Below the pieces are notes generated by a model. That model was not told where the DNA came from. It searched no databases and saw only the letters and a program-made list of their open reading frames with translations. A DNA stretch of 63,980 bases, the filler included, from Octopus bimaculoides (lineage: Eukaryota), in the NCBI RefSeq assembly GCF_001194135.2. It is 7 parts of 7 records of this genome, joined end to end, with 100 filler letters (N's around TTAATTAATTAA, not from the genome) between each part and the next. Parts side by side here need not be neighbours in the genome. Positions count along the whole stretch, not along the records: positions 1 to 19,046 come from NC_068986.1; 6 more parts are not named here. The stretch is one strand, 5' to 3'. Position numbers and translations under genes: made by a program. This document shows positions 1-19,007 of this stretch, piece after piece. The stretch's first letter is position 1, and each line of letters begins with the position of its first letter.

Positions 1-721
1 TATATATACAATGAAGATAATGGGATATATTGCCCTGGTAGGTACCAAATTTTCTCTGAAATCTGTTTCAGATGCTGGCTAACCAAGACACTCCTGATGT
101 AGTACTCGTGCTAATGAGTTGTTAGGTACTAGTAACTTCTCTCGTTGGGTAATTTTGTGCGTGTACTTCAGGACTGTATATATTCCGAAGAGTACTTAAT
201 AATATTTTTCACATCCAGAAACTTTATTTATCAATTACATAGAGCCTATTCTCCGGATCTACACAGATTTCAACTGCAGAGACTGCTGATGAAGCACGTG
301 CTTTTTAAAAGATATACATTTAAACAATTTAAATAAGCACATCCTACTGTGTATAATTATAATTATAGTAATATATGAGAAACGAAGGCCCCGACACTCC
401 AAAATAAACCAAACATATTAGAATACCTTTACATTCATAATGTACCCTGTGCAATAAGTGGAACAATAGTCTATTAGAAACTGTCTAACTTTGTTAAGGA
501 ATACGTAAATAGAATATTGAACCGGGAATACTAACTACAAATTTATAAAAGTGGAATATCGCGATATTGTGTAATGTACTTTAAAACACTTATATACAAA
601 AACAGATATTGTTATATATTTGCATGCGCATATAAATGAATATATGTATGTCTATATAAACGGAATGCAGATTGATGATACATAAATTATTATTATTACG
701 ACAATTATAAATATATAGGAT

Positions 722-730
722 GATACTTAC
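722..730 (-). promoter_or_regulatory. Putative 5' splice donor in the 3' UTR of GPCR copy 1
   Basis: ACA|GTAAGTA with GT at 730-729, 32 nt after the ancestral stop. The same position is conserved in all five paralogues. Confidence 0.7.
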
Positions 731-762
731 TGTATTGATAAAGTATTGAAACAGCGAAAGCC

Positions 763-1689
763 TTAGTGCGTTATAACCTGGAGCGAATAAACCGTACGTC
801 TGTTTACTGAAGACTCTTTACAAAATATTTGTTTCAGGTTGTCGCGAAAGGATTTGCTTACCCCAACATACAACATGAAGTTGAAAACGTTATTGATACA
901 AGATAACATATTTAAAAAATTGTAGATGACCATATCTTTTTTATTGAGGAAGAATATTATCAGGTAATTAATAGATGAAGGAAATGTGGTTAGGAGAAAG
1001 AGTTAGTTTATTGCAATCACTGCATAAATAGTACTTTTGAACTGTTCTGAAATGTTCCGTTGCAAATGCCGACCGAGGTCTGGTCGATAAAGTATTTTAC
1101 GTAATAAAAGGAAAGAACTTATCATCAAAATCATGCCTGGTGCGAATGAATAAATGATGTGTACAGCAAATAAAATATACGTCTCATTATTTAAAAATTC
1201 TGCTAGCATTGTATACGTAACAGCAACACATACAAGAAGCAGGAGCAGTACAAGAGAAGGTTTATTACGTTGAGAAGAATGAAGTCGTGAAAATGGGCAA
1301 AATATTGCCAGCAGACGTTCTAGAGATATGATAACGGTTATCCAGGAAGAATATATAAATATAGAAGAACTGAAAGCCTCGTATATTTCATTGCTAAAAA
1401 TACCTGAATGTACTGTCTTCGGTTGAGAAGTATTTGAAAACCATATTAGTTTTGGTAGATATAGAGAAATAGCAATGAAATCTACAAGAGCTAAACAATG
1501 AAGATATGGAACAATTTTTGTCTGACGTATTTGTTTCTTGAAAAATATTGCAAAAATTGCTAAATTTCCGACAGATCCAAATATCAGTAAAATTATTGAA
1601 ACATACCGTACAGTTCTAAGTAAATAAATATTTTTATCATTTTCTATCTGACTGCTTTTGGTCAATACTCCCATTTCTGTTTTGTTCAT
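763..1689 (-). pseudogene. Class A orphan/peptide-receptor-like GPCR, copy 1, with one in-frame TAA (1003-1005) in TM6
   Basis: The ORF-track 235 aa protein shows TM1 GSVGN, TM2 YLHCLALVD and TM3 ISLERLLAIFCPF. Manual translation past the TAA continues in frame for 79 codons (LFLLTTFPSSINY...INNVFNFMLYVGVSKSFRDNLKQIFCKESSVNRRTVYSLQVITH*), ending at TAA 763-765 and colinear with copies 3-5. First ATG is at 1689; the track start at 1710 is GTG. Confidence 0.9.
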
Positions 1690-2070
1690 ATTTTCTTGTA
1701 TTTCTTCCACTGGTCAGCCATTCTTGACGACAAAAATAACGAAATGAATCCAATTTCTATTATAAATTTTAAAAGACCCCATACGGCTTCATGCGTTGCT
1801 GTTTAATAACAGTATGTCACATTTAATTCTAATTCGTGTCGAGCGTTATCAGATAAATAAGTCGATAAATTATATCGGTAAATAGATAGATAGATAGGCA
1901 TGTGTATATTTATACGCGTGTGAATACATGTCTAGAGACATCGTTATAATAAAGCCTAGCTTTTTATTGGTTGAGTTCTACTGCTTTTGTAACTAGTACT
2001 ATACTTTAGATGACTGTGACCTTCACATTGGTGATAATGTAGACATCGAAGATAATGACAATGAGGATCT

Positions 2071-2103
<33 letters not shown>

Positions 2104-2289
2104 CGATGGTGATGGTGATGTCTATTGGAAGTAAAAATCACTACTATGATGACGATGAAATTGTAAAGATGATTATGCTGTTTGGTTGATGTTGATGATA
2201 TAAAGTTTTTAACAGCATGTACAACGATATGTCAAAGGAAGTATGAATTAATCAATTATTGCTTTCGTTTGCAAAGAGATTACAATACT

Positions 2290-2322
2290 TCCTGCCAATG
2301 GTTTGAACACTGTTAAGTAACT
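2290..2322. promoter_or_regulatory. Conserved 33-bp upstream element of the GPCR cassette (copy 1)
   Basis: TCCTGCCAATGGTTTGAACACTGTTAAGTAACT aligns without gaps to 13840-13872 and 18596-18628. Confidence 0.55.
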
Positions 2323-5054
2323 GCAACTGCAGTTGTTCGGGTGTGGTCTTACTTTAAGCTTCTGCAAGTTTTAACAAAATATATTATTTGTTTAATGTAT
2401 ATGTCACACGGTTATTCAATGAAACCACGTTCAAATATAATTACTGTCTCATACGACTTGTGAAACGACTAATTGCATCGATTACGTGCCCTTCGATATT
2501 ATAACTCATAATTTAACCCCTGGTAGACATGAATGACTCCTAATGTTGCGAGCATGTTTAATTGAGTACTGCTCGATGATGCCCCAGCCTTAGTAGTCCA
2601 AGTGGTTTAAATCAGGAGACATTGGAAGTGGAATGTAGGTTGTGTGAGACCGAGTAGATTCATAATAGAATATGTACGGCGTCACAAAGGGTAACTCTCT
2701 CAATACAGAGCTTGAGAAACGACTCTATTGTCAGGATGTAATCTACATGATTGATGCATTACTGGCGAAACGTGACGTAGCACAACATGGAAGTCATCGC
2801 TAACGTCACGACGATGAGTTCCTTCTATTTCATTTGGAATCGACCGCAATTGTGTAAATCTGAAAGCCGTGGTAAACTGGCCAGACGGTATAGGGCAGGC
2901 ATTTTTAGGCCACATTTTCTAGGTCTCTCCCTTACTGGGGTGAGCAGTGCATTCCTAAAAACGCTACTCAGTCGTCTGGAACGTTGCCGAAATCCTCCTC
3001 TACCCCGACTTCAAAGAATAACGACCAAAGTCCCAAACCGCCTGCATCAGGTTTGTGACTAAGACTTCCGATGGCTACCTCCACCTGTCACTTTCACCAT
3101 TACTCCGTCACTGCAGGGCTTCAGTGGAAAGTTGGGGCTGAAATACGCAGATACCCGTGTGAGAGGTTGATTAAAGTGGATGAGTCGTTGTACTCAGACA
3201 ATCCTACTCTCTCAACAGAATAAACTCTGATCCAGTGGCACGGAGATCCATTACATCGGGAGACCTCCATGCTGCTGTGAATGACAAGGGCGTCTTCGTC
3301 TTTTGTTTTGCTCTAAACGCTACACGACGCCTGCTGGAACCGCTTTTATAACTGTTGGGCCACTTTTAATTTCATCGGCCGAATCTGCCCGAACCAGTCT
3401 TCACATGTCAAGGGTAGGCAAACCCTGAACAACTCACGAGGGTGTTTGGTCAGTCGGCTGTTACATGCAAACAGATACGAGGAGCCATAGGTGAGTGCTG
3501 CGAAGAGTCAAGTGGGGTATCAAGATGGGCAGACTAATCCTAAAAGGCTGCGAAAATCCCCTATCAGAGGTGCTACTCTCACCCAACTCTCTCATACAAA
3601 TTTAAAACACGCTACATGTATGTTATAGATATAAAATAAATAAAAAGAAGTAACATATATCTATCTATATAAAATATATGTAAAACAACGAATATAAAAT
3701 ATACAATATATACATATATATCACACAAACACCCCCCCCCCCCACACACACACACACAGAGGCATGCAGAGGCAGACACGCACGCATGAACACACACATT
3801 GCTGAATGACCGTTGACTACTTATTAGTTCGTCTACCCCTGAAACTGTCAAATATGGGCTCAATATAGTTCCTTGTGGAACATGACTGTTGAATTCTGCA
3901 GGGACAAAATGTTGATATTTTTCAATAGGAAACGTGAAATTCAGTACTGTATCCTGCCACGGATTTCATTTTCCGGCAATGTAAATAGTACGGGATATAA
4001 CACCAGTTATTTAGCTTGCTCCAGAAACTTTAAGTATATTGTTTAGTAGAGGCTCTCTTAGGTAGTTCGAAAACGTATCTGGTTTGGATTATGTGATGTT
4101 TACTCAACCGAGAACGAGTTATTGTTGATACCATGACCCTTTTGTGAGAGGAGAGTGAGAGTTGTGATAGTTAACTACAAGTGATGTTACTCTTTTTGAA
4201 AACTGAAATGATATCGTAATGAGAATTGCTTCGATGTTCAGTCTAACAAAATTCTGCAGTGGCTGTCTATAGGAGAAGCAATTCAGCGACCGTATTCCTT
4301 CAGGAGACTAGAGGAGAATCTAACAGAGATATTTCTATGGGAAAATTCCCTGCTATTCAGATTCACTGCCAAATAATCATAGTTCGCTTCATTTATTGCT
4401 ACAATGATGGCTGAAAGTTATGCCTGGGTTAATATGTTGTGTGTTGAGTTCTCGAATTATTGACGTCTAGATCGGTGAAACCGCTAAAGATAGAGAAATG
4501 TTGTTTCTGCAGGATCCGTTGCATTACATTAGCTCCCTAATGAACAATAATTTCAGTATATATATTTCACTACTTAGAGGAGAAATGAGCTAACAATGGG
4601 TCTATGATTGTGGTCAACCGAATAAGACACTTTGGAATTGTGCGTCCACTTTTAATAACCCAGATCAATTTCCTGGTTTCTGCAGATGTTTTTGCATCTC
4701 ACGATTACTTATTGCTTTAGAGGCTGTCAAGGCCAATATTTTAGTTCAGCGCTGTTTTTATTCAGTTTTCGAGTTTTTTCTTATGATTGCCTATTACTGT
4801 ATTCGATGTCCCTTCATATGATGCTAACAGACAGTTAGCTGTTTTTAGGGTATTTGAAAATAAATTCAGATGACAAAAAATATTAATATAAACATGTGTA
4901 TGAGTGAGTGAGTCGCTCAATATGAATGACGTTTACGTTGCGGAGAAAAACTGAAATGAAAGATAGATTAATAAATAAGTAAATATTAACTATAAAACAA
5001 AACCATATAGGAAGATACTTACTGAAACGATGAAATACTTAAATAGTGAAAGCC

Positions 5055-5966
5055 TTACTTCATTGTAACCTGTAAGGGATACGCTGTACTTCTGTTCACT
5101 GAGGTCTCTTTACAATAAATTTGATTAAATTTGTTACGAAATGATTTGCTTACCTTAACATACACAATGAAGGTGAAAACATTATTGATACAATTTATCA
5201 TATTCTAAAACATGGAGAGGATCTTATTTCGTTGGTTTTTTTTATTGAGATTACGAAGTAATAAATAGAAGCAACAAAGGATAGCAGAAAAAATTGTGTT
5301 TATTGCGATGACGACATAAACACAATATTTTGTCTGTCCTGTAGCATTCAGTTCATAATGCTGATAGAGGTCTGGTCGATAGAGTATTTTATGTACCAGC
5401 AAAATAGAGCTGATTATTACAATCATAGCTTGTATGGATGAAAAATAAAGAATACAGCGCAGAGAATATACAATTCATTCTCCAAAAATACTGTCAGCAT
5501 TGCGTTCATGACAGTAAAAGATAATAGAATCAACAACAGTACAATGTAAGGCTTATAATTTGTGAAGAATGAAGTCTGGAAAATGGGCAAGAAATAGCTA
5601 ATAGACGTTCAATAGATATTGTAACTGTTATTCAGGAGGAATATATATGTATAACGAAAATGTGAAGTTTATATATATTTCACTCTTGAAAATTCTTCTA
5701 AGTGCCGGGTTAAATTGAAAGTCAGTTGACTGCCATATCAAATGTGCGAAAAACAACTAAATAGCAATGAAATCTGCAAGAGCCAAACAATGAAGATATG
5801 GAATAATTTTAGTTTGACGCATTTTCTTCCTACAAAATATTGCGATGAGTGCTAAATTTCCAATTGATCCAGAAGCCAGTGAATAAAATTGTCCTAACAA
5901 AAATACATTTGTATGATTTATTGCCTGGCGGCTATTGGCCATTGCCTCCATTTCTGTATTGTTCAT
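5055..5966 (-). pseudogene. GPCR copy 2, decayed pseudogene
   Basis: Homologous to the other copies, with these lesions: shortened TM1, TAG at 5757-5759 (Trp position), AT-repeat frameshift near 5645, TGA at 5632-5634 (Trp position), a second frameshift near 5430, and TAG at 5205-5207. The C-terminus ...KETSVNRSTAYPLQVTMK* is still recognisable. Confidence 0.9.
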
Positions 5967-6180
5967 ATTTTGTTCCAAAAATCTACAGGCTAGACAATCT
6001 TGAAGCAGGAATAAGTAAGTGTGATTAATTCCTATTATAAAGCATATTTACAATTTCGCTGAAAATTCCATCCCTGGCCGTTTAATATCTGTATATTTCA
6101 TGTAACTCTAATTCATGGTAAACTTGTGCATGCGAATATTATAAACCATAGATGCATTATTGGATAAATAGATGGGATGT

Positions 6181-6187
6181 ACGTATG

Positions 6188-6258
<71 letters not shown>

Positions 6259-6277
6259 ATGTATGCATACGTACATC

Positions 6278-6341
<64 letters not shown>

Positions 6342-6351
6342 ATATCTATCT
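6181..6351. repeat. Representative compound microsatellite (CA/TA/TG/TCTA); dozens of similar tracts flank most gaps
   Basis: Directly visible. These tracts produce the spurious YIYI/THTH/VCVC ORFs in the track. Confidence 0.95.
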
Positions 6352-6814
6352 ANNNNNNNNNNNNNNNNNNNNNNNNNNNNNNNNNNNNNNNNNNNNNNNN
6401 NNNNNNNNNNNNNNNNNNNNNNNNNNNNNNNNNNNNNNNNNNNNNNNNNNNNNNNNNNNNNNNNNNNNNNNNNNNNNNNATATATCAGTATATATATATA
6501 TATATATATATAAATGTATAGAAGTGTAAATACCAACACTGGGCTTAAGCAAAACATAGTTTACGAAGAAGCATTGTCGGCTTCACTTTACATATGTTGA
6601 AGTGTGCAGTCTCCCAAAACATTAGAGATGATGCTTTTCACAATGAAGCAGCTTTCTTTCCCTGTACCTTAGTTTCTGCAATACCGATAACTCTACGTTC
6701 TCATACGTCATCTAATTGTTTACATCCATATGTCTAGGTCATTTTAGTGACAAAGTTAGGATCTCGTTCTAATCTAAGCTGCCTTTCTACATGCTTTTGG
6801 TGTCAACAATTTCA

Positions 6815-6968
6815 GCATTTATCTTATTTACATTTGACCGGTATTTATCATAATCTTGTTTGTTGTTAACACAACGTTTCGGCTGATATACTCTCCAGCC
6901 TTCATCAGGTGCCTTGGGGAAATTTCGAACCTCGGTTCTCCTTCCTAAGGTATGTTTCGATGATATTA

Positions 6969-7038
<70 letters not shown>

Positions 7039-7185
7039 TCAGGTCACTGCTTGGAATCAAACTCAGGATCTTGGGATTAGTAGCCCGCTCTCTTAACGAC
7101 TACGCAATGCACCAATCAAATGTAAATAATGCAAATAATATACATAACGTACATAATTCATCATCTCTTAAATATAGAACTGAAT
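6815..7185 (-). mobile_element. Penelope-like element end (non-autonomous) with (ATT)n tract and partially inverted terminus
   Basis: Contains CCTGATGAAGG...CCGAAACGTTG, the typical Penelope-type terminal motif. TCAAATGTAAATAA occurs inverted at both ends. A related copy lies at 39585-39990. Confidence 0.6.
6868..6913 (-). ncRNA. Minimal type-I hammerhead ribozyme (Penelope-type)
   Basis: RNA GGCAC-CUGAUGA-A-GGCUG-GAGAGUAUAU-CAGCC-GAAA-CGU-U^-GUGUU. It has an intact core, a 5-bp stem I (GGCAC/GUGUU), a 5-bp stem II, and a palindromic ACGU stem III. Confidence 0.7.
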
Positions 7186-8061
7186 TTCAGCATTGTTCAT
7201 CACAAAATGACCGAAAAACATGTTTATAGAGAGGAGTTCATTGCTTCACACTCCTAACGTGCCGATTCTGCCGATAAGAAAAAGAAAAAACAAATAATAA
7301 AATGTGGCTGTAGTTCATTGGTAGTTAAGTATGAAATATATCTATCTATCTCTCTTTCTCAATATATAAATATATATATAATAAGGTATAATGGATACAT
7401 ATGTATATATATATATATATATATNNNNNNNNNNNNNNNNNNNNNNNNNNNNNNNNNNNNNNNNNNNNNNNNNNNNNNNNNNNNNNNNNNNNNNNNNNNN
7501 NNNNNNNNNNNNNNNNNNNNNNNNNNNNNNNNNNNNNNNNNNNNNNNNNNNNNNNNNNNNNNNNNNNNNNNNNNNNNNNNNNNNNNNNNNNNNNNNNNNN
7601 NNNNNNNNNNNNNNNNNNNNNNNNNNNNNNNNNNNNNNNNNNNNNNNNNNNNNNNNNNNNNNNNNNNNNNNNNNNNNNNNNNNNNNNNNNNNNNNNNNNN
7701 NNNNNNNNNNNNNNNNNNNNNNNNNNNNNNNNNNNNNNNNNNNNNNNNNNNNNNNNNNNNNNNNNNNNNNNNNNNNNNNNNNNNNNNNNNNNNNNNNNNN
7801 NNNNNNNNNNNNNNNNNNNNNNNNNNNNNNNNNNNNNNNNNNNNNNNNNNNNNNNNNNNNNNNNNNNNNNNNNNNNNNNNNNNNNNNNNNNNNNNNNNNN
7901 NNNNNNNNNNNNNNNNNNNNNNNNNNNNNNNNNNNNNNNNNNNNNNNNNNNNNNNNNNNNNNNNNNNNNNNNNNNNNNNNNNNNNNNNNNNNNNNNNNNN
8001 NNNNNNNNNNNNNNNNNNNNNNNNNNNNNNNNNNNNNNNNNNNNNNNNNNNNNNNNNNNNN

Positions 8062-8115
<54 letters not shown>

Positions 8116-9091
8116 GTTCATATACATACATATGTACACACACACATATATATATACATACATGCACACATATATACACACATACACATACATATACATA
8201 GACACATATATGCATATTCATACATTTGTACGCATATATACGCGATGGTCGTGTGGTGATGAATATTAAGGCAGTGCTATATGCATAGGAAAATGATGCT
8301 TATATTAACTAGTAAGATATTAAGTGAATGACAATGTATAAAGATGATGGATGGTCTATTAATCTAAAGAGAAAGATTGTGTTGTTAAGTTAGATGGAAA
8401 TTAGAGGGGACCAAAAAAGGTGGTTAAACGAGTAAAAGTTACTTGTATAAACTAAGTTATTATTATTACCAAAGTTTATATCGATAATCACGCTCTATAT
8501 TTGTCGGTGCAGGGGTTTTCCAATAGATAAAATAAAATAAAATTGTTTGTGGTGCAGTATTTTATAAGTAATAAAGCAGGGAGAAGAAAATATTTATATG
8601 TTTTGAATTCATCTTACGATAAAAGTAAACAAATGAACTAAGATTGCTTTCATAATCTTAGATATGTCTAAGAAAGTTAAAGAAGACAATTAAAATTTCC
8701 AGACGCAGAAGAGTGGGACTAATATAAACTAAACAGGATAAATAACTCCTATCTTTGCTAAAGAAAGTGAAAGCAGCAAGTGAAGGAGATGGAGGTACGA
8801 AAGGGCAACGAAATCAAAGGATTAAGGTTATTGGAGCACAACGTATTGAACATAGTTGGAAGTAATGTTTATGTTCAGTTAAACTGAAAGTAATGTTTAA
8901 GTTCATGTTTATAGACGTGCTGGTTGTCCTAATTTGGGTTCAAAAGATGGAGAGTGTTCAGATAACATATATCAAGTGAAACAAGGAACAAAAAAAAACA
9001 TATTACTTAATATATGTTTAAATAATGAATATAGAAACAATTATATAGGTTAATTCTTACAGAATGGTGATGAACTCCAATAGCGACAACC

Positions 9092-10027
9092 TTAGTAAGT
9101 TGTGTACTGCAACGAATATACTGCGTTTCTGTTCATAGAAGTCTCCTTACAACATATTCCTTTCAAGTTCTGGCGAAATGATTTGCTTACTGCCGCGTAT
9201 AAAACAATGTTGATAGCGTTATTAACACACGCTAGCATATCCAAGAATGTATATAATACGCAATCACTTTGTGACTGAAAAACCATTAGAAAGTAATATA
9301 TAGATATAGGAAAAGTTGTAAACAAAAACACACTATTAATTGTTATCACCAGGTAAACAGAATTTTTTGACAGTGATGTAGATCTTCGTTGAACATTCTG
9401 GCCAAGATTCGAAGGCTGGAGTATTTTATGAATCATGAGAATAGACATGAAGAATAATACTATAGCAGGTAGAAACGAATATAATACGATTGCAACACAC
9501 ATTTTGTAATCATGATTGTTTATAAGCATCGTAGACATTGCATAAGTTACAGCAACGCAGAAAAAAAGAGCAAACAATACGATGTAAGGTTTATATCGTC
9601 CAGAAGAGTAAATTTTGGAAAAGGGATACAAAATTGCTCCCAGCCGTTCAATTGATATGAGTACCGTAATCCAGGAGGAATATGCATTGAAGAATAATGA
9701 GATGGTCTCATAAGTTCGACTGGAAAAAATATTGGTGTCTGAAGCCAATAATTGTAGAGAATAAGATAACTGTATGATTCTCGGACAGTTCAAACAAATC
9801 GAAATCATATCTACAGAAACTAGACATAGGAGATATGGAATGACTTTATTCTTACGCATATTCTTCCTGCAAAATGTTGCAATGGCTGCTATATTCCCGA
9901 TAGTTCCAAAAGTAAATATCATTATACAACCATATCTTATGGACGTGATGAAATAAATATTTGCATCATGATTAACTTTCAGGCTATTGTTTGTCATTGT
10001 ATCCTTTTTAGTTATGTTATTTTCCAT
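9092..10027 (-). CDS. Class A GPCR copy 3, intact, 311 aa (FMRFamide-receptor/chemoreceptor-like orphan)
   Basis: Uninterrupted ORF with 7 hydrophobic segments and the motifs GTIGN, YLLCLVSVD, ISIERLGAILYPF and NNAINIVLY. N-terminal N-x-S/T sequons are present. Confidence 0.9.
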   Translation of the reverse strand: MENNITKKDTMTNNSLKVNHDANIYFITSIRYGCIMIFTFGTIGNIAAIATFCRKNMRKNKVIPYLLCLVSVDMISICLNCPRIIQLSYSLQLLASDTNIFSSRTYETISLFFNAYSSWITVLISIERLGAILYPFSKIYSSGRYKPYIVLFALFFCVAVTYAMSTMLINNHDYKMCVAIVLYSFLPAIVLFFMSILMIHKILQPSNLGQNVQRRSTSLSKNSVYLVITINSVFLFTTFPISIYYFLMVFQSQSDCVLYTFLDMLACVNNAINIVLYAAVSKSFRQNLKGICCKETSMNRNAVYSLQYTTY

Positions 10028-10207
10028 TATACAACTCGTAGAGCATTCTTGGCAAAACTGAATAAAATTTTACCTTGTTTTTCAATAATTGTTACTTTCC
10101 AGATTCTATTCTTTATCTCAACAATAATTGCGCAACGTTTTAAACCAAATGAAAATTGAATATATATATATACTCATCACTAGCCATATACATGTGTATA
10201 TATACAT

Positions 10208-10253
<46 letters not shown>

Positions 10254-11577
10254 GGGGGGTGTATGGGGGTGCGTGTGTATGTTCTGTGTGTGTAGATGTC
10301 AGAACAGATTTTTGTGTTAGAAAAATGGTTATTCACGTGAAAATTGTGTTGAAAGTGTTTCTACATCCCTTTTAATCTTATTGTGAAATACACGTTTACC
10401 TTGTTCTTTATTACGATCTTATTTAAGCCTCGTTTTTAGTTCACGTTAATGGTACTTACGAAACGACGCTTTATTGAATGAATACATAGTTTAATTATGT
10501 CTTAACTTCAGTGATTAGTCTCATTTATATAGTACGGAGATGGGTTTGGAAGCGAATAGATTCATTGCTTATACAATAACAGATATTTGAATGCAGATAC
10601 GTATAATGAGAAAGAAGTTGACAGAGAAGGAGTTGGAGAGTGAAAGTTAGAGAACGTGGATGTTTTGCAGAGAGAGAGAGAGAGAGAATGTGACAGAGAG
10701 CAGGACACGTTGAGAGACAGGGAGACGAAGTGAAAGCGTAGGTGAAATAGGAAGAGACACACCTAATGTAAAAAATAGGCGTTTTCTCATTCATTTAACT
10801 TCTAATAAATCTCCTTGAGTCTCATTGGTTCAACTTCTAATTTATCTCCTGATGACAGTGATGATGACGATAAAGAAGAGTGATGTCGGCGATGACAATC
10901 AATAGGAATATAATGACGATTAACGCGATAATGATGATGATGATGAGGAGGCGGAGACGGATCTAGTTGGTTACATTTCTTGGGATTTTCGACATTGTTA
11001 CTCATGACCATTTCAAATACTTAGAAAATACGAGATTCGATTGCCGAATACCATGTTATGGACCACGAAAAGAGATATTTGCGACTTGATTGTTGTACGA
11101 GCGGATATAGGCACAATTCATGCATTGTAGTTCAGTAGCAAATCTGCTGTAGTTTAAGAAGAGTGTTATCCTGTTTCAAATATTTGCAGGATGAGTCACA
11201 TAAGAAAAGATAAAATCACTTCATTAATATTATACAAGAAAAGAGTCGCAGATTTAAAAGAAACAGTAATAACATGTAACACTAATGTGACAGTGAAGAT
11301 ATATCGAGAAAATCCAAGTTACCGCCCTAGGTAGCTGTCTATGATATATTGAATCGGCTTCAACACTGCAACAGAGAGTCACTACTTGTGATATTATTAA
11401 ATTGAGTTACACAATATTTTCTAACGCTGCTTTGGAAAATACAAGCAAATTATTGTATCAAACCACATATCAAATAATCATAAACGGAAAATGTCGACAT
11501 TTAATATATTGCAATATAGTATATAAATGTTTATACACGAAATGTATGTACACACACGCACACACACACACATGCAT

Positions 11578-11653
<76 letters not shown>

Positions 11654-11677
11654 ATATATTTATATATTTATACATAA

Positions 11678-11838
11678 GCGCAGGAATGGCTGTGTGGTAC
11701 ATAGCTTGCTTCCTAACCATATGGTTCCGTGTTCAGTCCCACTGCGTGGCAATTTTGTCGAGTGTCTTCTACTATAACTTCGGGCCGACCAAAACCTAGT
11801 GAGTGGATTTGGTAGAGGAAAGCTCAAAGAAAACCGTC

Positions 11839-11924
<86 letters not shown>

Positions 11925-12143
11925 GTTAGTGCTTGTTGTTTGTGTCTGTTTTTATCACCCCACCATCGCTTCACAATCGATGTTGGTGTGTTTACGTTCC
12001 CATCACCTAGCAGTTCGGCAAAATAGAATGAGAACTAGGCTTGCAAAGAATAAGTTCTGGGATCGATTTATTCGATTAAATGAATTGCTCCAGCATGGCC
12101 GCAGTTAATTGACTGAAACAAATAAAAGAATAAAAGAAAAGAA
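11678..12143 (+). mobile_element. tRNA-derived octopod SINE, near full length, with internal (AT)n
   Basis: Head GCGCAGGAATGGCTGTGTGG...GTTCAGTCCCACTGCG and tail CTCCAGCATGGCCGCAGT...GACTGAAAC. Many further copies occur in the window. Confidence 0.85.
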
Positions 12144-12308
12144 TGTTAAAAATATGAATAAATGTGTATATAAATGACCCATATGATGAGAAGGGAAAAA
12201 ATGAAAGCGAGATATGATTAATAAGTATGTAAACAAAAATATAAGGACAGATATAGAAATATATGTAGATACTTACTGGATCGCTTATGTGCTCAATTAG
12301 CGAAAACC

Positions 12309-13220: not shown

Positions 13221-13839
13221 TTCTATTTCGTTAATTTATTCTTGCTTATTATTCAGTGGGAAAGCAGGAATAGTTAAATATAATCACTTCCAATTACACA
13301 ACAAATATCAAAAGACTGCACAATGTTCCACTTCTTTGACATGTAACACCTTTGTGGTATAACTCTATTTAAGCTCTGTTAAGCCTTTTTTATAAAAATC
13401 TATGTATGTATAATACACAGAGAGTCTATATGCTCACGCATGTATGTATGTATGTATGTATGTATGTATGTATGTGCATAAAGATACGGTTATATGATGA
13501 TCGGTTACGTTTTAGTGTTCATGCATTACTTGATGTTGGTAATGATGGTCATAATGAGGAGGAGGAGGAGAAGAAGGAGGAAGATGATGAGGAGGAGGGG
13601 GAGGATTATGATAAAGAGGGTGATCATAATCATGATGATGATGGCGGTGGTGGTGGTGGGGATTGGGGGAAGGTAGATTAGTCGGACTACTTCTAAGACG
13701 ATAAAATAACAGCAAGGATCGGGCTCGTCGTTTGATGTGGAGGAAGTAACATTATCAACGGTGATAAGACATTAAATGTATAAATGAATCGACATCCCAT
13801 TTGATTACAAAAAAGAAGAAAAGTAAAGGCGTGGATAGA

Positions 13840-13872
13840 TCCTGCCAAAGGCTTGTCTACGGCTAAGTAACT
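13840..13872. promoter_or_regulatory. Conserved 33-bp upstream element (copy 4)
   Basis: TCCTGCCAAAGGCTTGTCTACGGCTAAGTAACT, 620 bp upstream of the ATG. Confidence 0.55.
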
Positions 13873-14222
13873 CTAGAACTTCCGTTGTTATCTTGTATTA
13901 TACTCGTCTAAAGCGAAACAAAAAAAGAAGATGCATTTTAATGTACTATGATTGAAATGATTTAAAATGAATTATTGATTGTATTTAATATGCTAATCGA
14001 TTAAGCTTCTGGGCACGGATCTAAATTCACGATGGAAATTTCGAGGCTAGAATTATAGTCCATATAAATGTGCTGGTGGGTTTCTCAACGAAATAATTTT
14101 CCAAGGAATAATTCTAATTGTGATATGACACACGAGAAAGACATCGGCGTTTGCAGTAATTTACAAATATGTATATCTTAATTTCACTAATATGTGTATG
14201 ATCGTATGGAAGCATATGCGTT

Positions 14223-14265
<43 letters not shown>

Positions 14266-15979
14266 NNNNNNNNNNNNNNNNNNNNNNNNNNNNNNNNNNN
14301 NNNNNNNNNNNNNNNNNNNNAGAAAAGAAGTTATGAAGTGAAATGCTATGATAGTTACTGTCAGTAAGTGAGGAAGTAAGAATTTACGCCCCACTAATAT
14401 TAAGATAAGAATATACTTCTAAAATTAATATTTAGCTTCTAACTTGGTGAGTTGTCAGAAACGTTTGAACGTCGAGCGAAATTCTTAGCGGTCTGAGTTC
14501 AAATTCTACCGAGGCCGGCTTTCCTTTCCGTATATTTTATTTTCCAATTAAGTCTTTAATAAAGTTAGTTTTTATTATGCTGTTGAATTAGAGTAATTTT
14601 AACTTTTATTATTAATTTTCTCTTTCAGCTGTAATTAACTTGCTTTCTGCTTTTTTTAGTTGCTTTCCTTTTCTTTTTAGTTAATTATTTAATCAGGCTA
14701 GTTCATTGATGTGTTATATGTATCATATATGCGCATCTAAATTTATTGGGGCAGGAATATAGTCATTTTTGGCTGTGTCGCTATGGGCAGACTTGAAGTA
14801 AAGTTGTCCAGAAAAGGCACTGGTTAAAAGTGCCTATATTCTAAATTTACATTTAAATTTCGAAATTAATTAAAAGGGATTTTTCATAAATCAAATTTAT
14901 GTTAATGGGTAATATTAACTTGTGTATATCTGATGTGCTTTTATAATTACTGTTCTATTGATAATTATTGATACATCTAGATTAACAGGAGTCAGTGTTG
15001 TTATCACTCACAATCTAGGTTACTTAAGGTGATCCTGGTAACTGATAGATTTGGGATCTTGTTTTTTGCAACTTTTGGTGAGCCATGGTGCAACCAACAC
15101 GATGGTAAAATTCCCTGCTATTAATTTGGAGTGGATGGGTAATATCAAATAATTCAATCACAACATATATTTAAATTACACACGAAAAAAATTGAAATAT
15201 TATCACTTACATGGAAAAATCGTAATATTATCTTTCAGTATTTTATAAGTTATAATCTTAAATAATTAATTGACACATTATTAATTATCTTATAACAGCA
15301 ATGCCTGGAAAAATCATGGATTAAATGGGAAAATGCAAGCATGAAAAGTAATATTCTTCAGATTACATGTTTTAAAATGTTATTACACCTGGAAAAGTAT
15401 AGGGCAAGCTATGACTTCTAGTAAAATAAAGAATAAATAGTTTACTTAAAATATTGCTGCTAAAGTTAAAATTTGAATATCAAAAATTATTTTTTATTAT
15501 ATACAAATAACACTATACTTATTTAAGTAGAATTTGGCTAATTTACTACCTTAAACACAGGAAAAAGTGACTAATTAGACAACTTTACAAATTAGCTGAA
15601 CAGTTTTGTAGAATAAACTTAAAAGAGGATAACTGTAAAGAGTGATACATTACAAGAACTGGCATTCTTTGCGGCAATATTTTAAGTATTATCTTCCCTT
15701 CAACTTCTACTTCCTTTTCTTTCACTTAACAGTTACAGCAGCAAAAGTTGATGACGTGATTTTCACCAAACTAGAATGTATACTTTCCACGTTCATATTT
15801 GAAATTTTAGCATTTCGATAATTTTTCTCAGTCCCGAATTTGATGGACATATAGCGACTCAAGAAATTACTAGTGAGAATTATTTTCATGTATTTGAAGA
15901 GACCTAGAACGGTTAGGAACATTGGTTGTACCCAATAAAGACTATTACACATTGTGTCTCCTATTTTATTAATACCATA

Positions 15980-16038
<59 letters not shown>

Positions 16039-16075
16039 ATAGATAGATAGATAGACAGACAGACAGAAGACAGAC

Positions 16076-16122
<47 letters not shown>

Positions 16123-16196
16123 CAGATAGATAGAAGCATATGAACAAACATCAACATATGTATATGTGTGTGTATGAATATATATATATATTCTTA

Positions 16197-16523
16197 TTTA
16201 CTTCCTCACCACTGGAATAATGATTGATGTTTGCCTCTCAGACCCTATTCCATGGGGCCGAAGAGATGATAGTCCAGTGATGAGAAAGTAAAAACTGTAG
16301 TGAAGACGTGGCTCAAAGAACAGTCAGCAGAATTTACCGGGCAGGAATACATGCTCTCATTTGAAGGTGGAACGTTGCTACTGAGACAAACGGTGACTAT
16401 TTTGAGAAGTAGGGATGTGATCCACAAAGGACCAGATTCCTTTTTATGTATGATACATGTTCCTCTGTTGGTCATTATACCTGTCCTAAACAAAAGGGCA
16501 TTACATTTTGACTCACCCTCATA
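16197..16523 (+). mobile_element. Mariner transposon 3' relic with a small inverted segment
   Basis: The plus strand encodes DEKVKTVVKTWLKEQSAEF...GIHALI..WN...NGDYFEK*, then the TIR (TTTTGACTCACCCTCATA). The minus strand at 16200-16277 encodes DYHLFGPM..GLRGKH. Confidence 0.8.
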
Positions 16524-16830
16524 GATATGCATATATTAATGCAGCTGAAAAAATTGCTGGATTTTTAGGGTATGATTTAAAATAAAGATAAGATTTTCCT
16601 TTTACATATTATTGATTGTTGCAAAATAATCTGATTTTTTAAAATTCCACGAAAGGATTGTTGGATATATCTGTCACACATAAGGATGTACCTGGGATTG
16701 TAATCTACATATATTTAATTGTATTTACTTGCTGCAAATTTCACCGTATTCCTTTTAATCCGAGTGCTTTCTTGATATCTGCCAGGATATTTTAATCCCA
16801 TATTGTTTTCCCTCTCTCTCTCGATCTCTC

Positions 16831-16882
<52 letters not shown>

Positions 16883-17070
16883 ATGGTATGTGTGCGTGTG
16901 ATTTTAAATAGATAAACGTTATGATTATATATGCTATATAAATGATGTATATGTTGAGGAGAGAACGAAAAGAGAGAATGATAATTGTGTAAAATTATAA
17001 ATTTAACGAGAAATATAGATATATATCTAAATTCTTACCTAATCGGTAAATCCATCCATTAATGAAAGCC

Positions 17071-17991
17071 TTAGTTCGTTGTAACCTGCAATGAATACAC
17101 CGTATTTCTGGTCACTGAAGTCCCTTTACCACAAATTTCTTTTAAATTATCGCGAAATGATTTGCTTACCGCGACATACAAAACGAAGTTTAGAGCGTTA
17201 TTCATACAAGCTATTATATCTAAGAAGAAATATACGACCTCATCATGTTGGTTTTGGAATGTCAGTATCAAGTAATTAAGAGATGCGGGAAATGTTGTTA
17301 GTAGGAATATTGAGTTTATAGCGATGACGATATAAATGATATTTTTTGACTGCTCTGAAGAATTGCGTTGAACATGCTGACCGAGCTCAGCTCGATGGAG
17401 TATTTTATACACCAGCAAAAGAGAGCTGATAATTAAAATCATAGCTGGTAGGAATGAATAAATGAAGAGTCCGGCGCAAAAAGTGTACACTCTATTCTTT
17501 AAAAATAACGCCAGCATTGCGTACGTAATAGCAACACATACAAGAAGCAAGAATAGTACAAGATAAGGCTTATAACGTTGTGAAGAATGAAGGGTGGAAA
17601 ACGGGCAAAAAATTGCCCACAGACGTTCAAGAGATATGATAACGGTTATCCAGGAGGAATATATATTTATAGAAAATGTAACTCCTCCATATATTTCACT
17701 GTCGAATATACTTTTATGTGTCGTGTTAGATTGGAATGCGTGTGACTGCCATATGATATTTGCGTAATTCAACCAAATAGCAATAAAATCTACAAGAGCT
17801 AAACATTGAAGATATGGGACAATTTTATTCTGACGCATTTTCTTCCTGAAAAATATTGCAAAAACTGTTAAATTCCCGATAGAACCAAATGTCAATAGAA
17901 TTATTGAAACATATCGCATAGTTCTAAATAAATGAATATCTGCATTGTTTTCTGTATGGGTACTGTTGGGTACTGTATGGGTACTGGTCAT
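17071..17991 (-). CDS. Class A GPCR copy 5, intact, 306 aa from the first ATG
   Basis: The track ORF starts at a TTG (18099); the first in-frame ATG is at 17991. Motifs are GSIGN, YLQCLALVD, ISLERLWAIFCPF and NNALNFVLY. Confidence 0.9.
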   Translation of the reverse strand: MTSTHTVPNSTHTENNADIHLFRTMRYVSIILLTFGSIGNLTVFAIFFRKKMRQNKIVPYLQCLALVDFIAIWLNYANIIWQSHAFQSNTTHKSIFDSEIYGGVTFSINIYSSWITVIISLERLWAIFCPFSTLHSSQRYKPYLVLFLLLVCVAITYAMLALFLKNRVYTFCAGLFIYSFLPAMILIISSLLLVYKILHRAELGQHVQRNSSEQSKNIIYIVIAINSIFLLTTFPASLNYLILTFQNQHDEVVYFFLDIIACMNNALNFVLYVAVSKSFRDNLKEICGKGTSVTRNTVYSLQVTTN

Positions 17992-18595
17992 GGTCTCTGT
18001 ATCTGTTTCGTTCAAATTTTCGTTCAAAGTTTCATCCGCCTGAGAGGCAAATATGACAGCTGGAATAACAAAAGGTATCAAATGCCTATTATACGCCAAA
18101 ATGTAATAAGTCTTTCTGCAGCTTGTATCTACACCTTATGTGTGTGAAATGTTCTCATATAATTCTGTCTGTATATAATATAGGTAAATAAACTAGCTTG
18201 TATGTATGTATATATGTACGTATATATATGGATACAGTTATAACGAGGCTAGTTTTCCTTTTTCACTAGTTTCTACTGCTGCTGTATATAGTAATATATT
18301 ACCGCGACGTTGTTAAGGGTGACAACAACGACAGTGAAGATGATGATGATGATGACAATTCAGATAATGACAACGCAGATGATGAGGTTGATGAGTGTGA
18401 CTACGATCGTGGTATTGTTGGCTACGTGAATTGGGAGTGATGTGTGAATAACTGTTACTAAGACGGGTAATCCATAGAGATGACAATTCCAGCTGGTTAA
18501 TGTAGATAACATTTTTAACAATATCTCTACTAGTATGAAAGGAAAGGTATAAAATGAATCAATATCACTTTTGATTACAAAAAGGAGAGAAAACT

Positions 18596-18628
18596 TCCTG
18601 CCGAAGACTTGACTACTCTTAAGTAACT
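18596..18628. promoter_or_regulatory. Conserved 33-bp upstream element (copy 5)
   Basis: TCCTGCCGAAGACTTGACTACTCTTAAGTAACT, about 605 bp upstream of the ATG. Confidence 0.55.
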
Positions 18629-19007
18629 CTAGCAGTTCCGCTGTATTCTTAATTTAAGCTTGCACGAGATTTACGTTGCAAGTATAATGTAAGTCCTTTG
18701 TGTTAATTGTATATTGAATATATTAATGGATTTAACTTTCCCCAGAGGAACTAAATCCATGAAGGAAATTTCAATTTTAACATTATAGTGCACATAATAT
18801 GGGTATAGACGGTTTTCTCCATGAAATGGTTTCCCAAATAGAAGTTTCGAATACTACTAACATTTCATATGCTACATAACAAGAACAAAGCCATTGGCGT
18901 TTCGTGAGAGGCAATAACATAGAATGCGTCCTTTATCACTTTCTCACTTTCTGTCCGTCTGCCTCTCCAGCCATGTCTCAATTAAACTATCAGTCACCAT
19001 ACATATA

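What the first reader, a model, noticed from the sequence alone, without database searches (positions are those of the whole stretch)
720..18630. Tandem array of five compact GPCRs, each carrying the same non-coding cassette
Five same-strand, single-coding-exon class A GPCR paralogues (about 303-311 aa) are spaced 3-5 kb apart and are in different states: three intact, one with a single stop, one decayed. Intergenic DNA is mostly unalignable. A fixed architecture nevertheless recurs: 33-bp element, (GAT/CAT)n tract, TATAAT, Inr-like motif, ORF, stop, 31-32 nt, GTAAG. Birth-and-death arrays of intronless GPCRs with stereotyped proximal elements are how vertebrate odorant receptors and the Aplysia chemoreceptor-like GPCRs are organised (established). 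That this is an octopus chemoreceptor subfamily under a shared regulatory logic is inference.
Basis: partly seen in the sequence, partly recalled or inferred. Interest (0 to 1): 0.7.

Follow-up and report, generated by a model that had tools for sequence, protein, structure and literature searches.

The report
Octopus GPCR gene array, shared splice signals
Five tandem copies of a small octopus-specific receptor gene (three intact, one freshly stopped, one dead) sit in a row, an ordinary kind of gene-family expansion, and the one clearly selected non-coding feature they share is a splice-donor site about 32 bases after the stop codon, so these "intronless" genes probably have an intron in their 3' untranslated region.

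Summary
Partly confirmed. Five minus-strand paralogues of a compact class-A (Pfam Srw-like) GPCR lie 3.2-4.8 kb apart: c3, c4 and c5 are intact (311, 303, 306 aa), c1 has one TCA>TAA stop, and c2 has six indels plus stops. The three N gaps are intergenic and flanked by microsatellites.

dS is 0.67-1.3 and dN/dS about 0.3. This is a birth-and-death tandem array in an octopod-centred subfamily. Tandem, lineage-specific class-A GPCR clusters in cephalopods are already published.

The "same cassette in each copy" holds only in part:
- **3' part, real and selected.** GTAAGNAT lies 31-32 nt after the stop in 5/5 copies. It lies at 32-35 nt in three relatives from elsewhere, one with saturated dS. 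The spacer itself is only 53-72% identical.
- **5' part, incomplete.** The 33-bp element occurs in 3/5 copies, TATAATAG in 3/5, and the (CAT)n tract in 4/5. The surrounding flank is near neutral.

I read the cassette as the gene's own non-coding exon and splice signals, copied with each duplication. The certain-looking piece is a 3'-UTR intron. No transcript data were reachable, and a chemosensory role is untested.

The parts
763..1689 (-). c1: GPCR paralogue, 308 codons, with one in-frame TAA at 1003-1005 (TCA>TAA). Otherwise intact.
   Evidence: dN/dS against the other copies is 0.29-0.33.
723..730 (-). c1 post-stop 5' splice-site motif GTAAGTAT, 32 nt after the TAA
5055..5966 (-). c2: decayed pseudogene with a 15-nt deletion, five frame-shifting indels and several stops
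5015..5022 (-). c2 post-stop GTAAGTAT, 32 nt after the TAA. It is retained even in the pseudogene.
9092..10027 (-). c3: intact 311-aa GPCR and the most divergent copy (dS 1.2-1.3 to the others)
9053..9060 (-). c3 post-stop GTAAGAAT, 31 nt after the TAA
12309..13220 (-). c4: intact 303-aa GPCR. The ancestral ATG is now ATT and the second in-frame ATG is used.
12269..12276 (-). c4 post-stop GTAAGTAT, 32 nt after the TAA
17071..17991 (-). c5: intact 306-aa GPCR. The ancestral ATG is now TTG and a downstream in-frame ATG is used. The ORF stays open up to TTG 18099.
17031..17038 (-). c5 post-stop GTAAGAAT, 32 nt after the TAA
2290..2322 (-). 33-bp element of c1 (AGTTACTTAACAGTGTTCAAACCATTGGCAGGA), 633 nt before the ATG. 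A TATA-like TTAAAG lies about 30 nt upstream of a duplicated CAGTT.
13840..13872 (-). 33-bp element of c4, 652 nt before the ATG. TATAATA begins 30 nt upstream of its first base.
18596..18628 (-). 33-bp element of c5, 637 nt before the ATG. TTAAAT begins about 30 nt upstream of its first base.
2020..2135 (-). (CAT/ATC)n tract of c1. A GT lies just after it (GTATAG at 2004; alternative GTCACA at 2020), a possible exon-1 donor. This is inferred.
10860..10960 (-). (CAT/ATC)n tract upstream of c3, at -830..-930. No 33-bp element lies beyond it.
13528..13665 (-). (CAT/CTC)n tract of c4, ending in CAA|GTAATG (GT at 13529-13528)
18301..18420 (-). (CAT)n tract of c5, ending in GCG|GTAATA (GT at 18302-18301)
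1726..1764 (-). c1 proximal block: TATAATAG (1764-1757), a pyrimidine-rich run TTATTTTTGTCGTC, then AAG about 36 nt before the ATG. It can be read either as TATA box + start site or as branch point + polypyrimidine tract + 3' splice site.
6003..6039 (-). c2 proximal block: TATAATAG (6039-6032), then TTATTCCTGCTTCAAG
18045..18093 (-). c5 proximal block: TATAATAG (18093-18086), then TTGTTATTCCAG and CCTCTCAG

Best explanation
SHOWN.
- The window holds a tandem array of five paralogues of a compact class-A GPCR of about 300-310 aa. Pfam classes it as Srw-like. Its signature residues are ERL in place of DRY, TTFP in TM6 and NNxxNFxLY in TM7.
- The family is an octopod-centred, lineage-specific expansion.
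- The copies arose by old local duplications (dS 0.67-1.3).
- The coding sequence is under purifying selection (dN/dS about 0.3).
- The array is turning over: c2 is dead and c1 is one nonsense change away from an intact gene.

INFERRED: WHAT THE CASSETTE IS. The recurring non-coding cassette is not a separate device. It is what remains of the gene's own non-coding exon boundaries, copied with every duplication.

INFERRED: THE 3' PART. The strongly conserved piece is a consensus U1-type 5' splice site, GTAAG(T/A/C)AT, 31-35 nt after the stop codon. The coding exon is therefore probably not the last exon. The mRNA would carry a 3'-UTR intron whose exon junction lies inside the roughly 50-nt zone after the stop. 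In mammals a junction that close does not trigger nonsense-mediated decay (established knowledge, the 50-55 nt rule). Whether that rule holds in molluscs is unknown.

INFERRED, ABOUT 50-55% LIKELY: THE 5' PART. The 5' items form a short upstream non-coding exon and its intron:
- a TATA-like box about 30 nt before the 33-bp element, which would then be the start-site region;
- exon 1 running through the (CAT)n tract to a GT just after it;
- a microsatellite-rich intron of about 280 nt;
- TATAATAG as the branch-point region, then a polypyrimidine run and an AG about 36 nt before the ATG.

NOT TESTED. Ligand, tissue and any chemosensory role.
For: ARRAY AND COPY STATES..

FAMILY.
- Pfam 7TM_GPCR_Srw scores 41-50 bits (cut-off 22.2). 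7tm_1 scores 29.6-35.7 bits (cut-off 30.5).
- The AF2 model shows seven long helices plus helix 8, at low confidence (pLDDT 58.7).
- The best solved relatives are GPR139, GALR2, NTSR1 and MAS, at only E about 1e-8.
- An exhaustive profile search gives 24 representative clusters at E<=1e-30, then a continuum of other class-A receptors.
- Named relatives are only cephalopod; annelids appear in the outer tier.

SELECTION. dS is 0.67-1.3 within the window, and dN/dS is 0.29-0.38.

DONOR SITE.
- It is present in 5/5 copies at 31-32 nt after the stop.
- It is also present in L001 (35 nt), L002 (33 nt) and L004 (32 nt). L004 has dS 1.6-3.5 to all the others and lies outside the 93%-bootstrap clade that holds c1-c5.
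- The spacer between stop and donor is only 53-72% identical, while GTAAG.AT is invariant.
- Five of the six GTAAGNAT 8-mers on the minus strand are these sites.

5' READING.
- The 33-bp island has 23/33 invariant columns, against 32% of columns invariant overall (permutation p = 0.002).
- A TATA-like box lies about 30 nt upstream of it in all three copies.
- A GT lies at the homologous place after the tract in c1, c4 and c5.
- A pyrimidine-rich run followed by AG lies about 36 nt before the ATG. By my reading of the alignments, six of eight family members have the AG at the aligned position.
- Database model P0007 joins a translated (CAT)n tract to about -33 of the ATG. The genomic contig of its close relative L002 has a (TACA)n microsatellite at -218.
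Against: - No transcript evidence of any kind was reachable, so no splice site is shown to be used.
- No acceptor or downstream exon could be located. AG positions 65-105 nt after the donor are not homologous between copies, and c4 has none there.
- More distant family members lack the donor: L010 and L009 have none, and L007 has only GTAAC at +36.
- The proposed exon-1 donors (GTATAG, GTAATG, GTAATA) are weak.
- L002 has no AG at the aligned -36 position. c5 has none there either, though it has CAG 9 nt upstream and 10 nt downstream. c4 keeps CAAG|AAT, but behind an insertion and with a poor polypyrimidine run.
- P0007 is a messy model, with an internal deletion and a frame-shifted tail.
- The 33-bp island rests on three related sequences only.
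- The 5' flank overall is at near-neutral identity.
Confidence: 0.6

Rival explanations
1. Each ORF exon is the first exon. It is driven by its own proximal TATAAT + Inr promoter, with the 33-bp element as a shared upstream enhancer. The common cis-logic coordinates receptor choice, as in vertebrate odorant-receptor clusters.
For: - TATAATAG sits about 73-75 nt before the ancestral start codon in c1, c2 and c5. Three of the four such 8-mers on the strand are at these sites.
- A block of about 150 nt before the ATG is well conserved between c1 and c2.
- The 33-bp island is the best-conserved window in the 5' flank.
Against: - TATAAT is absent from c3, degenerate in c4 (TGTAATTG) and absent from L002. 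All three have intact ORFs.
- The sequence between TATAAT and the ATG is a pyrimidine run ending in AG, which is what a 3' splice site looks like.
- The 33-bp element has its own TATA-like box about 30 nt upstream.
- It is found in only three copies.
- No expression data exist for or against receptor choice.
Confidence: 0.3
2. Apart from the donor site, the 5' 'cassette' has no function. It is residual homology of the youngest three duplicates (c1, c4, c5), and its apparent islands are chance fluctuation in a near-neutral alignment.
For: - Pairwise identity of the 760-nt 5' flank is 54-60%, against 62-65% at third codon positions.
- The elements are missing from c3, the copy with the largest dS.
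- No RNA structure is predicted: consensus -2 kcal/mol.
- Only three sequences are available.
Against: - The island has 23/33 invariant columns, and the column-permutation p is 0.002.
- The pattern has 0 chance matches in 200 shuffles.
- TATAATAG is conserved in position, including in c2.
Confidence: 0.3
3. Clustered-protocadherin or UGT1A-like design. Every ORF exon is a 'variable' exon with its own promoter, and its post-stop donor splices to one shared set of downstream non-coding exons beyond c1. Promoter choice then gives one receptor per cell.
For: - All five copies are on the same strand.
- Each is followed by a strong donor.
- No paralogous 3' exon is detectable after any copy.
- c3 has no AATAAA or ATTAAA within 1.5 kb downstream.
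Against: - Each exon ends in its own stop codon, so shared exons would be 3' UTR only.
- If the AG at -36 is a real acceptor, an upstream donor would splice into the next ORF exon rather than skip it.
- The same donor is found in relatives on separate short contigs whose context is unknown.
- The window ends 684 nt after the c1 flank, so the predicted shared exons cannot be seen.
Confidence: 0.07
4. The post-stop GTAAGNAT is not spliced. It acts as a U1 snRNP binding site in the terminal exon, either suppressing nearby cleavage and polyadenylation in AT-rich DNA or damping expression.
For: - The motif has perfect U1 complementarity on the intron side and is invariant.
- No conserved acceptor is found.
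- AATAAA or ATTAAA hexamers lie 237-535 nt downstream of the stop in c1, c2, c4 and c5.
Against: - This rests on analogy only.
- A strong donor downstream of a probable acceptor-flanked exon is more simply an exon end.
Confidence: 0.08

Closest known systems
Lineage-specific class-A GPCR expansions in tandem clusters in cephalopods and other lophotrochozoans (Ritschard et al. 2019, PMC6408891; the 2025 Mol Biol Evol study of lophotrochozoan class-A GPCRs, PMC11886862)
   Same: - Tandem, same-scaffold clusters of divergent class-A paralogues.
- Full-length, truncated and pseudogene members side by side.
- No one-to-one orthologues outside the lineage.
- A proposed but unproven chemosensory role.
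   Different: - Those studies work at the level of protein repertoires and scaffold positions.
- In the passages I read, they do not describe conserved non-coding signals such as the post-stop donor.
- Which of their groups this family falls in was not determined.
Aplysia californica candidate chemoreceptors AcCRb and AcCRc (Cummins et al. 2009, PMC2700072)
   Same: - Uninterrupted coding region and short N-terminus.
- Clustered genes 9-13 kb apart, with pseudogenes among them.
- An ER-type motif instead of DRY.
- A similar TM3/ICL2 signature: AcCRb WITAFVTFERCLCIA against WITV(I/T)IS(I/L)ERLLAI here.
   Different: - The octopus proteins are shorter (303-311 aa against 319-433 aa).
- They have ERL rather than ERC.
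- No invariant cysteine appears in the family alignment.
- No direct sequence comparison or phylogeny with AcCR proteins could be made here.
- Expression in a chemosensory organ is shown for Aplysia, not for these genes.
Nematode Srw chemoreceptors / FMRFamide-receptor-like class-A GPCRs (Pfam PF10324)
   Same: Scores above the Pfam gathering threshold (41-50 bits against 22.2).
   Different: - The main match covers only the C-terminal part of the profile (positions about 189-318 of 319).
- The Pfam name says nothing about function in a mollusc.
Vertebrate odorant-receptor gene clusters
   Same: - Single coding exon.
- Tandem arrays with many pseudogenes.
- Non-coding 5' exons spliced just before the ATG (general knowledge, and only if my 5' reading is right).
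   Different: - An independent expansion of class-A receptors.
- No O/E + homeodomain promoter pair was shown.
- Singular expression is unknown.
Clustered protocadherin / UGT1A variable-exon loci
   Same: A row of same-strand large exons, each followed by a 5' splice site and each possibly with its own upstream conserved element.
   Different: - Each exon here ends with its own stop codon.
- Constant exons were not seen.
- Probable acceptors lie upstream of the ORF exons.

Membership tests
Class-A (rhodopsin-like) GPCR, Pfam 7tm_1 | Profile match at or above the gathering score | tested here: inconclusive
   c5 scores 35.7 bits, c3 30.4 and c4 29.6, against a cut-off of 30.5. 93 solved class-A receptors match the family profile at E<=1e-3, the best at 1e-8.
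Class-A (rhodopsin-like) GPCR, Pfam 7tm_1 | Seven transmembrane helices plus helix 8 | tested here: met
   The AF2 model has helices 13-44, 55-85, 96-125, 139-160, 164-195, 211-243 and 249-272, plus 274-284. Confidence is low (pLDDT 58.7).
Class-A (rhodopsin-like) GPCR, Pfam 7tm_1 | E/DRY at the end of TM3, CWxP in TM6, NPxxY in TM7, and a TM3-ECL2 disulfide | tested here: inconclusive
   Alignment A1 shows an invariant ER (ERL). It shows TTFP, in which the proline is kept. It shows NNxxNFxLY, in which N and Y are kept and the proline is replaced. There is no invariant cysteine anywhere. These are variant forms of the motifs, not the canonical ones.
Pfam 7TM_GPCR_Srw (PF10324) | Profile match above the gathering score of 22.2 bits | tested here: met
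   41.0, 50.5 and 50.2 bits. The best stretch covers only profile positions about 189-318 of 319.
Aplysia AcCR-type candidate chemoreceptors | Uninterrupted coding region, genomic clustering, pseudogenes among the members | tested here: met
   The family description is from PMC2700072.
Aplysia AcCR-type candidate chemoreceptors | Signature (W/F)ITAF(V/I)TFERCLCIA in TM3/ICL2, and phylogenetic grouping with AcCR sequences | tested here: inconclusive
   The motif here is WITV(I/T)IS(I/L)ERLLAI. W, I, T, E, R, L and I are shared at the corresponding places. No AcCR sequence was available for alignment or a tree.
Aplysia AcCR-type candidate chemoreceptors | Expression in chemosensory epithelium | not testable with these tools
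   No transcript data were reachable.
Lineage-specific expansion (no one-to-one orthologues outside the lineage) | Close relatives confined to one lineage, with paralogues clustering by lineage | tested here: inconclusive
   24 representative clusters reach E<=1e-30. Every named one is Octopus, and a cuttlefish falls in a sister subfamily. The other close relatives are unnamed Logan and ENA contigs. Species sampling in the databases is thin.
Clustered protocadherin / UGT1A-type variable-exon locus | Variable exons are open at their 3' end and continue into shared constant coding exons | tested here: not met
   Every copy has its own conserved stop codon 31-32 nt before the donor.
Clustered protocadherin / UGT1A-type variable-exon locus | All donors join one common downstream acceptor | not testable with these tools
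   This needs transcripts and sequence beyond window position 1.
Gene with a 3'-UTR intron | A consensus 5' splice site downstream of the stop, conserved beyond neutral expectation | tested here: met
   GTAAG.AT is invariant in all eight family members that carry the site (c1-c5, L001, L002, L004), while the spacer is 53-72% identical. L004 is at saturated dS.
Gene with a 3'-UTR intron | A matching acceptor and downstream exon, with spliced transcripts | not testable with these tools
   No conserved acceptor was found and there are no transcripts.

The most novel reading that the evidence does not exclude
The five ORF exons are alternative 'whole-receptor' units of one regulated locus. Each has its own start-site element, and each post-stop donor splices to a common set of downstream non-coding exons, as in clustered protocadherins or UGT1A. 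Promoter choice would then give one receptor per sensory cell through a shared 3' UTR.
Probability: 0.07. Interest if true: 0.8.

Novelty: new member of a known kind. Interest (0 to 1): 0.3.

Why it matters
**Annotation.** Members of this octopus GPCR subfamily should not be treated as intronless. The existing database model of c5 (P0003, 274 aa) ends at an internal GTAAGC and loses helix 8 and the tail. Knowing where the real exon end lies, 31-32 nt past the stop, would correct such models.

**Biology.** If the donor is used, the family offers a clean natural case of a 3'-UTR intron held inside the zone where, in mammals, it does not trigger nonsense-mediated decay. That would make the rule testable in a mollusc.

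**Sensory biology.** The array adds a defined, compact locus with three intact genes, one 'flatliner' and one dead copy. It could be used to ask whether octopus GPCRs, and not only the nicotinic-like chemotactile receptors, are expressed in suckers or the olfactory organ. Nothing here shows that they are.

Tried and rejected
**Transcript or genome context for the window's own genes.**
- Exact-product look-ups of c3, c4 and the database model of c5 found nothing, and neither did P0004.
- All Logan contigs recovered (L001-L008, L010) are short genomic pieces ending in microsatellites, not cDNA.

**The 33-bp element as a structured RNA.** The consensus fold is -2.1 kcal/mol, so I rejected this.

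**Rfam and tRNA scans.** Rfam gave only sub-threshold hits on microsatellites, and no tRNA was found.

**A plus-strand coding exon across the (GAT)n tract.** The tract is open only because of its triplet nature. tblastx shows stops in the surrounding conserved block in all frames, and Pfam finds nothing.

**A mini-intron with a local acceptor 65-105 nt after the donor.** The AG positions are not homologous, and c4 has no AG there, so this is not supported.

**A distal element upstream of c2 or c3.** The profile search was negative. The triplet run near c2 is a SINE tail.

**The bacterial-type promoter scan.** It is irrelevant to a eukaryotic locus.

**Fold search.** I did not run it, because the AF2 model is of low confidence.

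**Loci of distant relatives.** These were O. sinensis L009 and the cuttlefish L011. They carry single-exon ORFs but none of the non-coding signals, so they did not help with the cassette.

Full report
**What is there**

All five genes are on the minus strand.

| Copy | ATG | Stop | State |
|---|---|---|---|
| c1 | 1689 | 763-765 | 308 codons, one in-frame TAA at 1003-1005 |
| c2 | 5966 | 5055-5057 | decayed pseudogene |
| c3 | 10027 | 9092 | intact, 311 aa |
| c4 | 13220 | 12309 | intact, 303 aa |
| c5 | 17991 | 17071 | intact, 306 aa |

- The c1 stop corresponds to TCA in c5, so it is a single C>A change.
- c2 has a 15-nt deletion, five frame-shifting indels (+2, -1, -1, -2, +2) and several stops.
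- ATG-to-ATG spacing is 4277, 4061, 3193 and 4771 nt. Two of these intervals contain N gaps of estimated length.

**The gaps**

- The three N runs (6353-6479, 7425-8061, 14266-14320) are all intergenic.
- Each abuts a microsatellite: (CTAT)n, (AT)n and (TA)n.
- No reading frame or conserved element crosses a gap.
- One caveat applies. The first gap lies 387 nt upstream of c2. The absence of distal 5' elements for c2 is therefore not firm.

**What the proteins are**

- Pfam gives 7TM_GPCR_Srw at 41-50 bits (cut-off 22.2). It gives 7tm_1 at 29.6-35.7 bits (cut-off 30.5).
- The family alignment keeps ER at the end of TM3 (ERL rather than DRY), TTFP in TM6, NNxxNFxLY in TM7 and a conserved tail NR.TVYSLQ.TT. 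It has no invariant cysteine.
- An AlphaFold model is of low confidence (pLDDT 58.7) but shows seven long helices plus helix 8.
- The nearest solved receptors are GPR139, galanin R2, neurotensin R1 and MAS. They match only at E about 1e-8.

**How wide the family is**

- An exhaustive profile search of 1.84 billion representatives gives 24 clusters at E<=1e-30. Below that comes a continuum of about 1000 class-A receptors.
- The named members of the close set are Octopus bimaculoides proteins: A0A0L8ICK4, A0A0L8II40 and A0A0L8GGA3.
- An O. sinensis protein and a cuttlefish protein fall in a sister subfamily. Annelid proteins appear only in the outer tier.
- The window is therefore most likely O. 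bimaculoides (inference).

**Evolution**

- Among c1, c4 and c5, dS is 0.67-0.82. To c3 it is 1.2-1.3. dN/dS is 0.29-0.38 throughout, including pairs with c1. The c1 stop is therefore recent, polymorphic or an error.
- In an NJ tree, c1-c5 group with four sequences from outside the window at 93% bootstrap.
- Within that clade the window copies interleave with the outside sequences: c3 with P0158 (100%), c5 with P0001 (73%), c1 with A0A0L8ICK4 (61%).
- So the array is old. Either it extends beyond the window or it has shed copies elsewhere.
- This is a standard birth-and-death tandem family. Such tandem, lineage-specific class-A clusters in cephalopods are already described (PMC6408891, PMC11886862).

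**The 3' half of the cassette is real**

- After the stop come 32, 32, 31, 32 and 32 nt in c1 to c5, and then GTAAG(T/A)AT.
- The same arrangement is found in three relatives on separate genomic contigs: L001 (35 nt), L002 (33 nt) and L004 (32 nt).
- L004 shares only about 40% protein identity. Its dS to every other member is 1.6-3.5, and it lies outside the c1-c5 clade.
- The spacer is only 53-72% identical between copies, about what third codon positions show. GTAAG.AT, in contrast, is invariant.
- Five of the six GTAAGNAT 8-mers on the whole minus strand are these sites.
- More distant members lack the site. L010 and L009 have none, and L007 has only GTAAC at +36.
- This is a consensus U1-type 5' splice site under purifying selection.
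- The simplest reading is that the coding exon is not the terminal exon, so the mRNA has a 3'-UTR intron.
- A junction 31-35 nt after the stop lies inside the roughly 50-nt zone that does not elicit nonsense-mediated decay in mammals (established knowledge). Whether that is the constraint in octopus is inference.
- I could not find the acceptor. AG dinucleotides 65-105 nt downstream are not at homologous positions, and c4 has none there. No paralogous downstream block exists.

**The 5' half is only partly shared**

- The exact 33-bp pattern occurs three times, with 0 expected by chance. The sites are 633-652 nt before the ATGs of c1, c4 and c5. A 170-nt profile finds nothing for c2 or c3.
- The 760 nt upstream of c1, c4 and c5 are collinear at 54-60% identity. 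That is close to the third-codon identity of 62-65%, so most of this flank is simply not yet erased.
- The 33-bp island stands out, with 23 of 33 columns invariant against 32% overall (permutation p = 0.002). It rests on only three related sequences.
- The (CAT)n tract is present in c1, c4 and c5, and further upstream in c3. The triplet run near c2 is the tail of a tRNA-like SINE.
- TATAATAG lies about 73-75 nt before the ancestral start codon in c1, c2 and c5. It is TGTAATTG in c4 and is absent in c3 and L002.

**A different reading of the 5' items**

In all three copies that have the 33-bp element, a TATA-like box begins about 30 nt before it. The boxes are TATAATA in c4, TTAAAT in c5 and TTAAAG in c1. 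The element's first bases, (C/G)AGTTAC, resemble an arthropod-type initiator, TCAGTY. That is the geometry of a core promoter, so the island may be the start-site region.

- Directly after the (CAT)n tract, at the homologous place, each copy has a GT: AAA|GTATAG in c1, CAA|GTAATG in c4 and GCG|GTAATA in c5.
- The proximal block reads TATAATAG, then about 15 nt, then a pyrimidine run such as TTATTCCTGCTTC, then AAG about 36 nt before the ATG.
- By my count about 15-16 of the 19 bases before the AG are pyrimidines in c1 and c2.
- An AG is at that aligned place in six of eight family members. L002 lacks it. c5 lacks it too but has CAG 9 nt upstream and 10 nt downstream. c4 keeps CAAG|AAT, but behind an insertion.
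- This looks like branch region, polypyrimidine tract and 3' splice site at least as much as TATA box plus initiator.
- One database gene model of a paralogue (P0007) joins a translated (CAT)n tract to about -33 of the ATG. The genomic contig of its close relative (L002) carries a (TACA)n microsatellite at -218. That fits an intron there. But P0007 is a poor model, with an internal deletion and a frame-shifted tail, so this is weak evidence.
The three exons would be a non-coding exon 1 of about 320-340 nt, the ORF exon, and an unknown 3' exon.

**Function**

- Nothing here tests ligand or tissue.
- The motif resemblance to Aplysia AcCRb (WITAFVTFERCLCIA against WITV.IS.ERLLAI) fits the 'candidate chemoreceptor' label. 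So does the family's behaviour: compact, uninterrupted ORFs, clustered, with pseudogenes.
- The published cephalopod expression surveys report varied tissues for expanded GPCRs, including axial nerve cord, suckers, skin and testes. Which of their groups this family belongs to is not known.

**Verdict**

- The array and the state of each copy are confirmed and ordinary.
- The 'same cassette in every copy' claim is true only for the post-stop splice donor. That donor is the one feature clearly under selection, and it implies a 3'-UTR intron in a gene family usually called intronless.
- The 5' elements are shared by the three or four youngest copies. They are better explained as the gene's own promoter and splice signals than as a special regulatory device.
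- The most novel reading still open is shared downstream exons, as in protocadherin clusters. I consider it unlikely (about 7%).

Noticed in passing
window 861, 5153, 9190, 12407, 17169 (first base, minus strand): The codons for V-S-K at the start of helix 8 are GTA AGC AAA in c1-c5 and in L002. The synonymous choice is identical despite dS of 0.7-1.3. This makes a donor-like (G|GTAAGC) site inside the ORF. The database gene model of c5 (P0003, 274 aa) ends exactly there. It could be a conserved alternative donor or a trap for gene predictors.
   Followed up: partly
window about 13235 (c4), about 18016 (c5); L001 about 155: The ancestral start codon (ATG in c1, c2 and L002) has become ATT in c4, TTG in c5 and AAG in L001. 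These copies start at a downstream in-frame ATG: five codons further in c4, nine codons further in c5.
   Followed up: partly
window about 1719-1721 (c1) and about 10054-10056 (c3), minus strand: The conserved AAGAATG about 30 nt before the main ATG gives an upstream ATG. It opens a short out-of-frame uORF that overlaps the main start in c1 and c3.
   Followed up: no
window about 6960-7110, minus strand: A tRNA-like SINE (…GAGCGGGCTACTAATCCCAAGATCCTGAGTTTGATTCCAAGCAGTGACC…) with a long (AAT)n tail lies between c2 and c3. A similar tRNA-derived element follows the GPCR in contig L002. ARAGORN calls no tRNA in the window.
   Followed up: partly
window 11684-12135: An interspersed repeat starts about 175 nt downstream of the c4 stop. 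It is 81% and 79% identical to two copies in the O. sinensis locus L009 (8645-9093 and 29-265).
   Followed up: partly
window about 2500-3900: This stretch is GC-richer (0.44-0.47 against about 0.31 elsewhere) and lies between c1 and c2. The ORFs in it (2787-3062 plus strand, 3612-3863 minus strand) have no Pfam match, and no repeat match was found in the other loci.
   Followed up: partly
window 2018-2134, 13530-13681, 18306-18440, plus strand: Read on the plus strand, the (CAT)n tracts are open D/E-rich frames that end in W-x-stop in c1 and c5. They are probably only a consequence of triplet-repeat structure. No Pfam match was found for the one such ORF tested, the c4 copy (13406-13681).
   Followed up: partly
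window 17952-17986: An 11-nt unit (CTGTATGGGTA on the plus strand) is repeated 3.3 times inside the N-terminal coding region of c5. The protein repeat there is THT.PNSTHTEN.
   Followed up: no
family alignment A1 (c3, c4, c5 and relatives): There is no invariant cysteine anywhere in the family, so the canonical class-A TM3-ECL2 disulfide is not conserved. The proline of NPxxY is replaced (NFxLY).
   Followed up: no
window 7592-9091 (1.5 kb downstream of the c3 stop, minus strand; the far end, 7592-8061, is N gap): No AATAAA or ATTAAA hexamer occurs in the sequenced part of the 1.5 kb after c3, although the DNA is about 70% A+T. The other four copies have one 237-535 nt after the stop.
   Followed up: no
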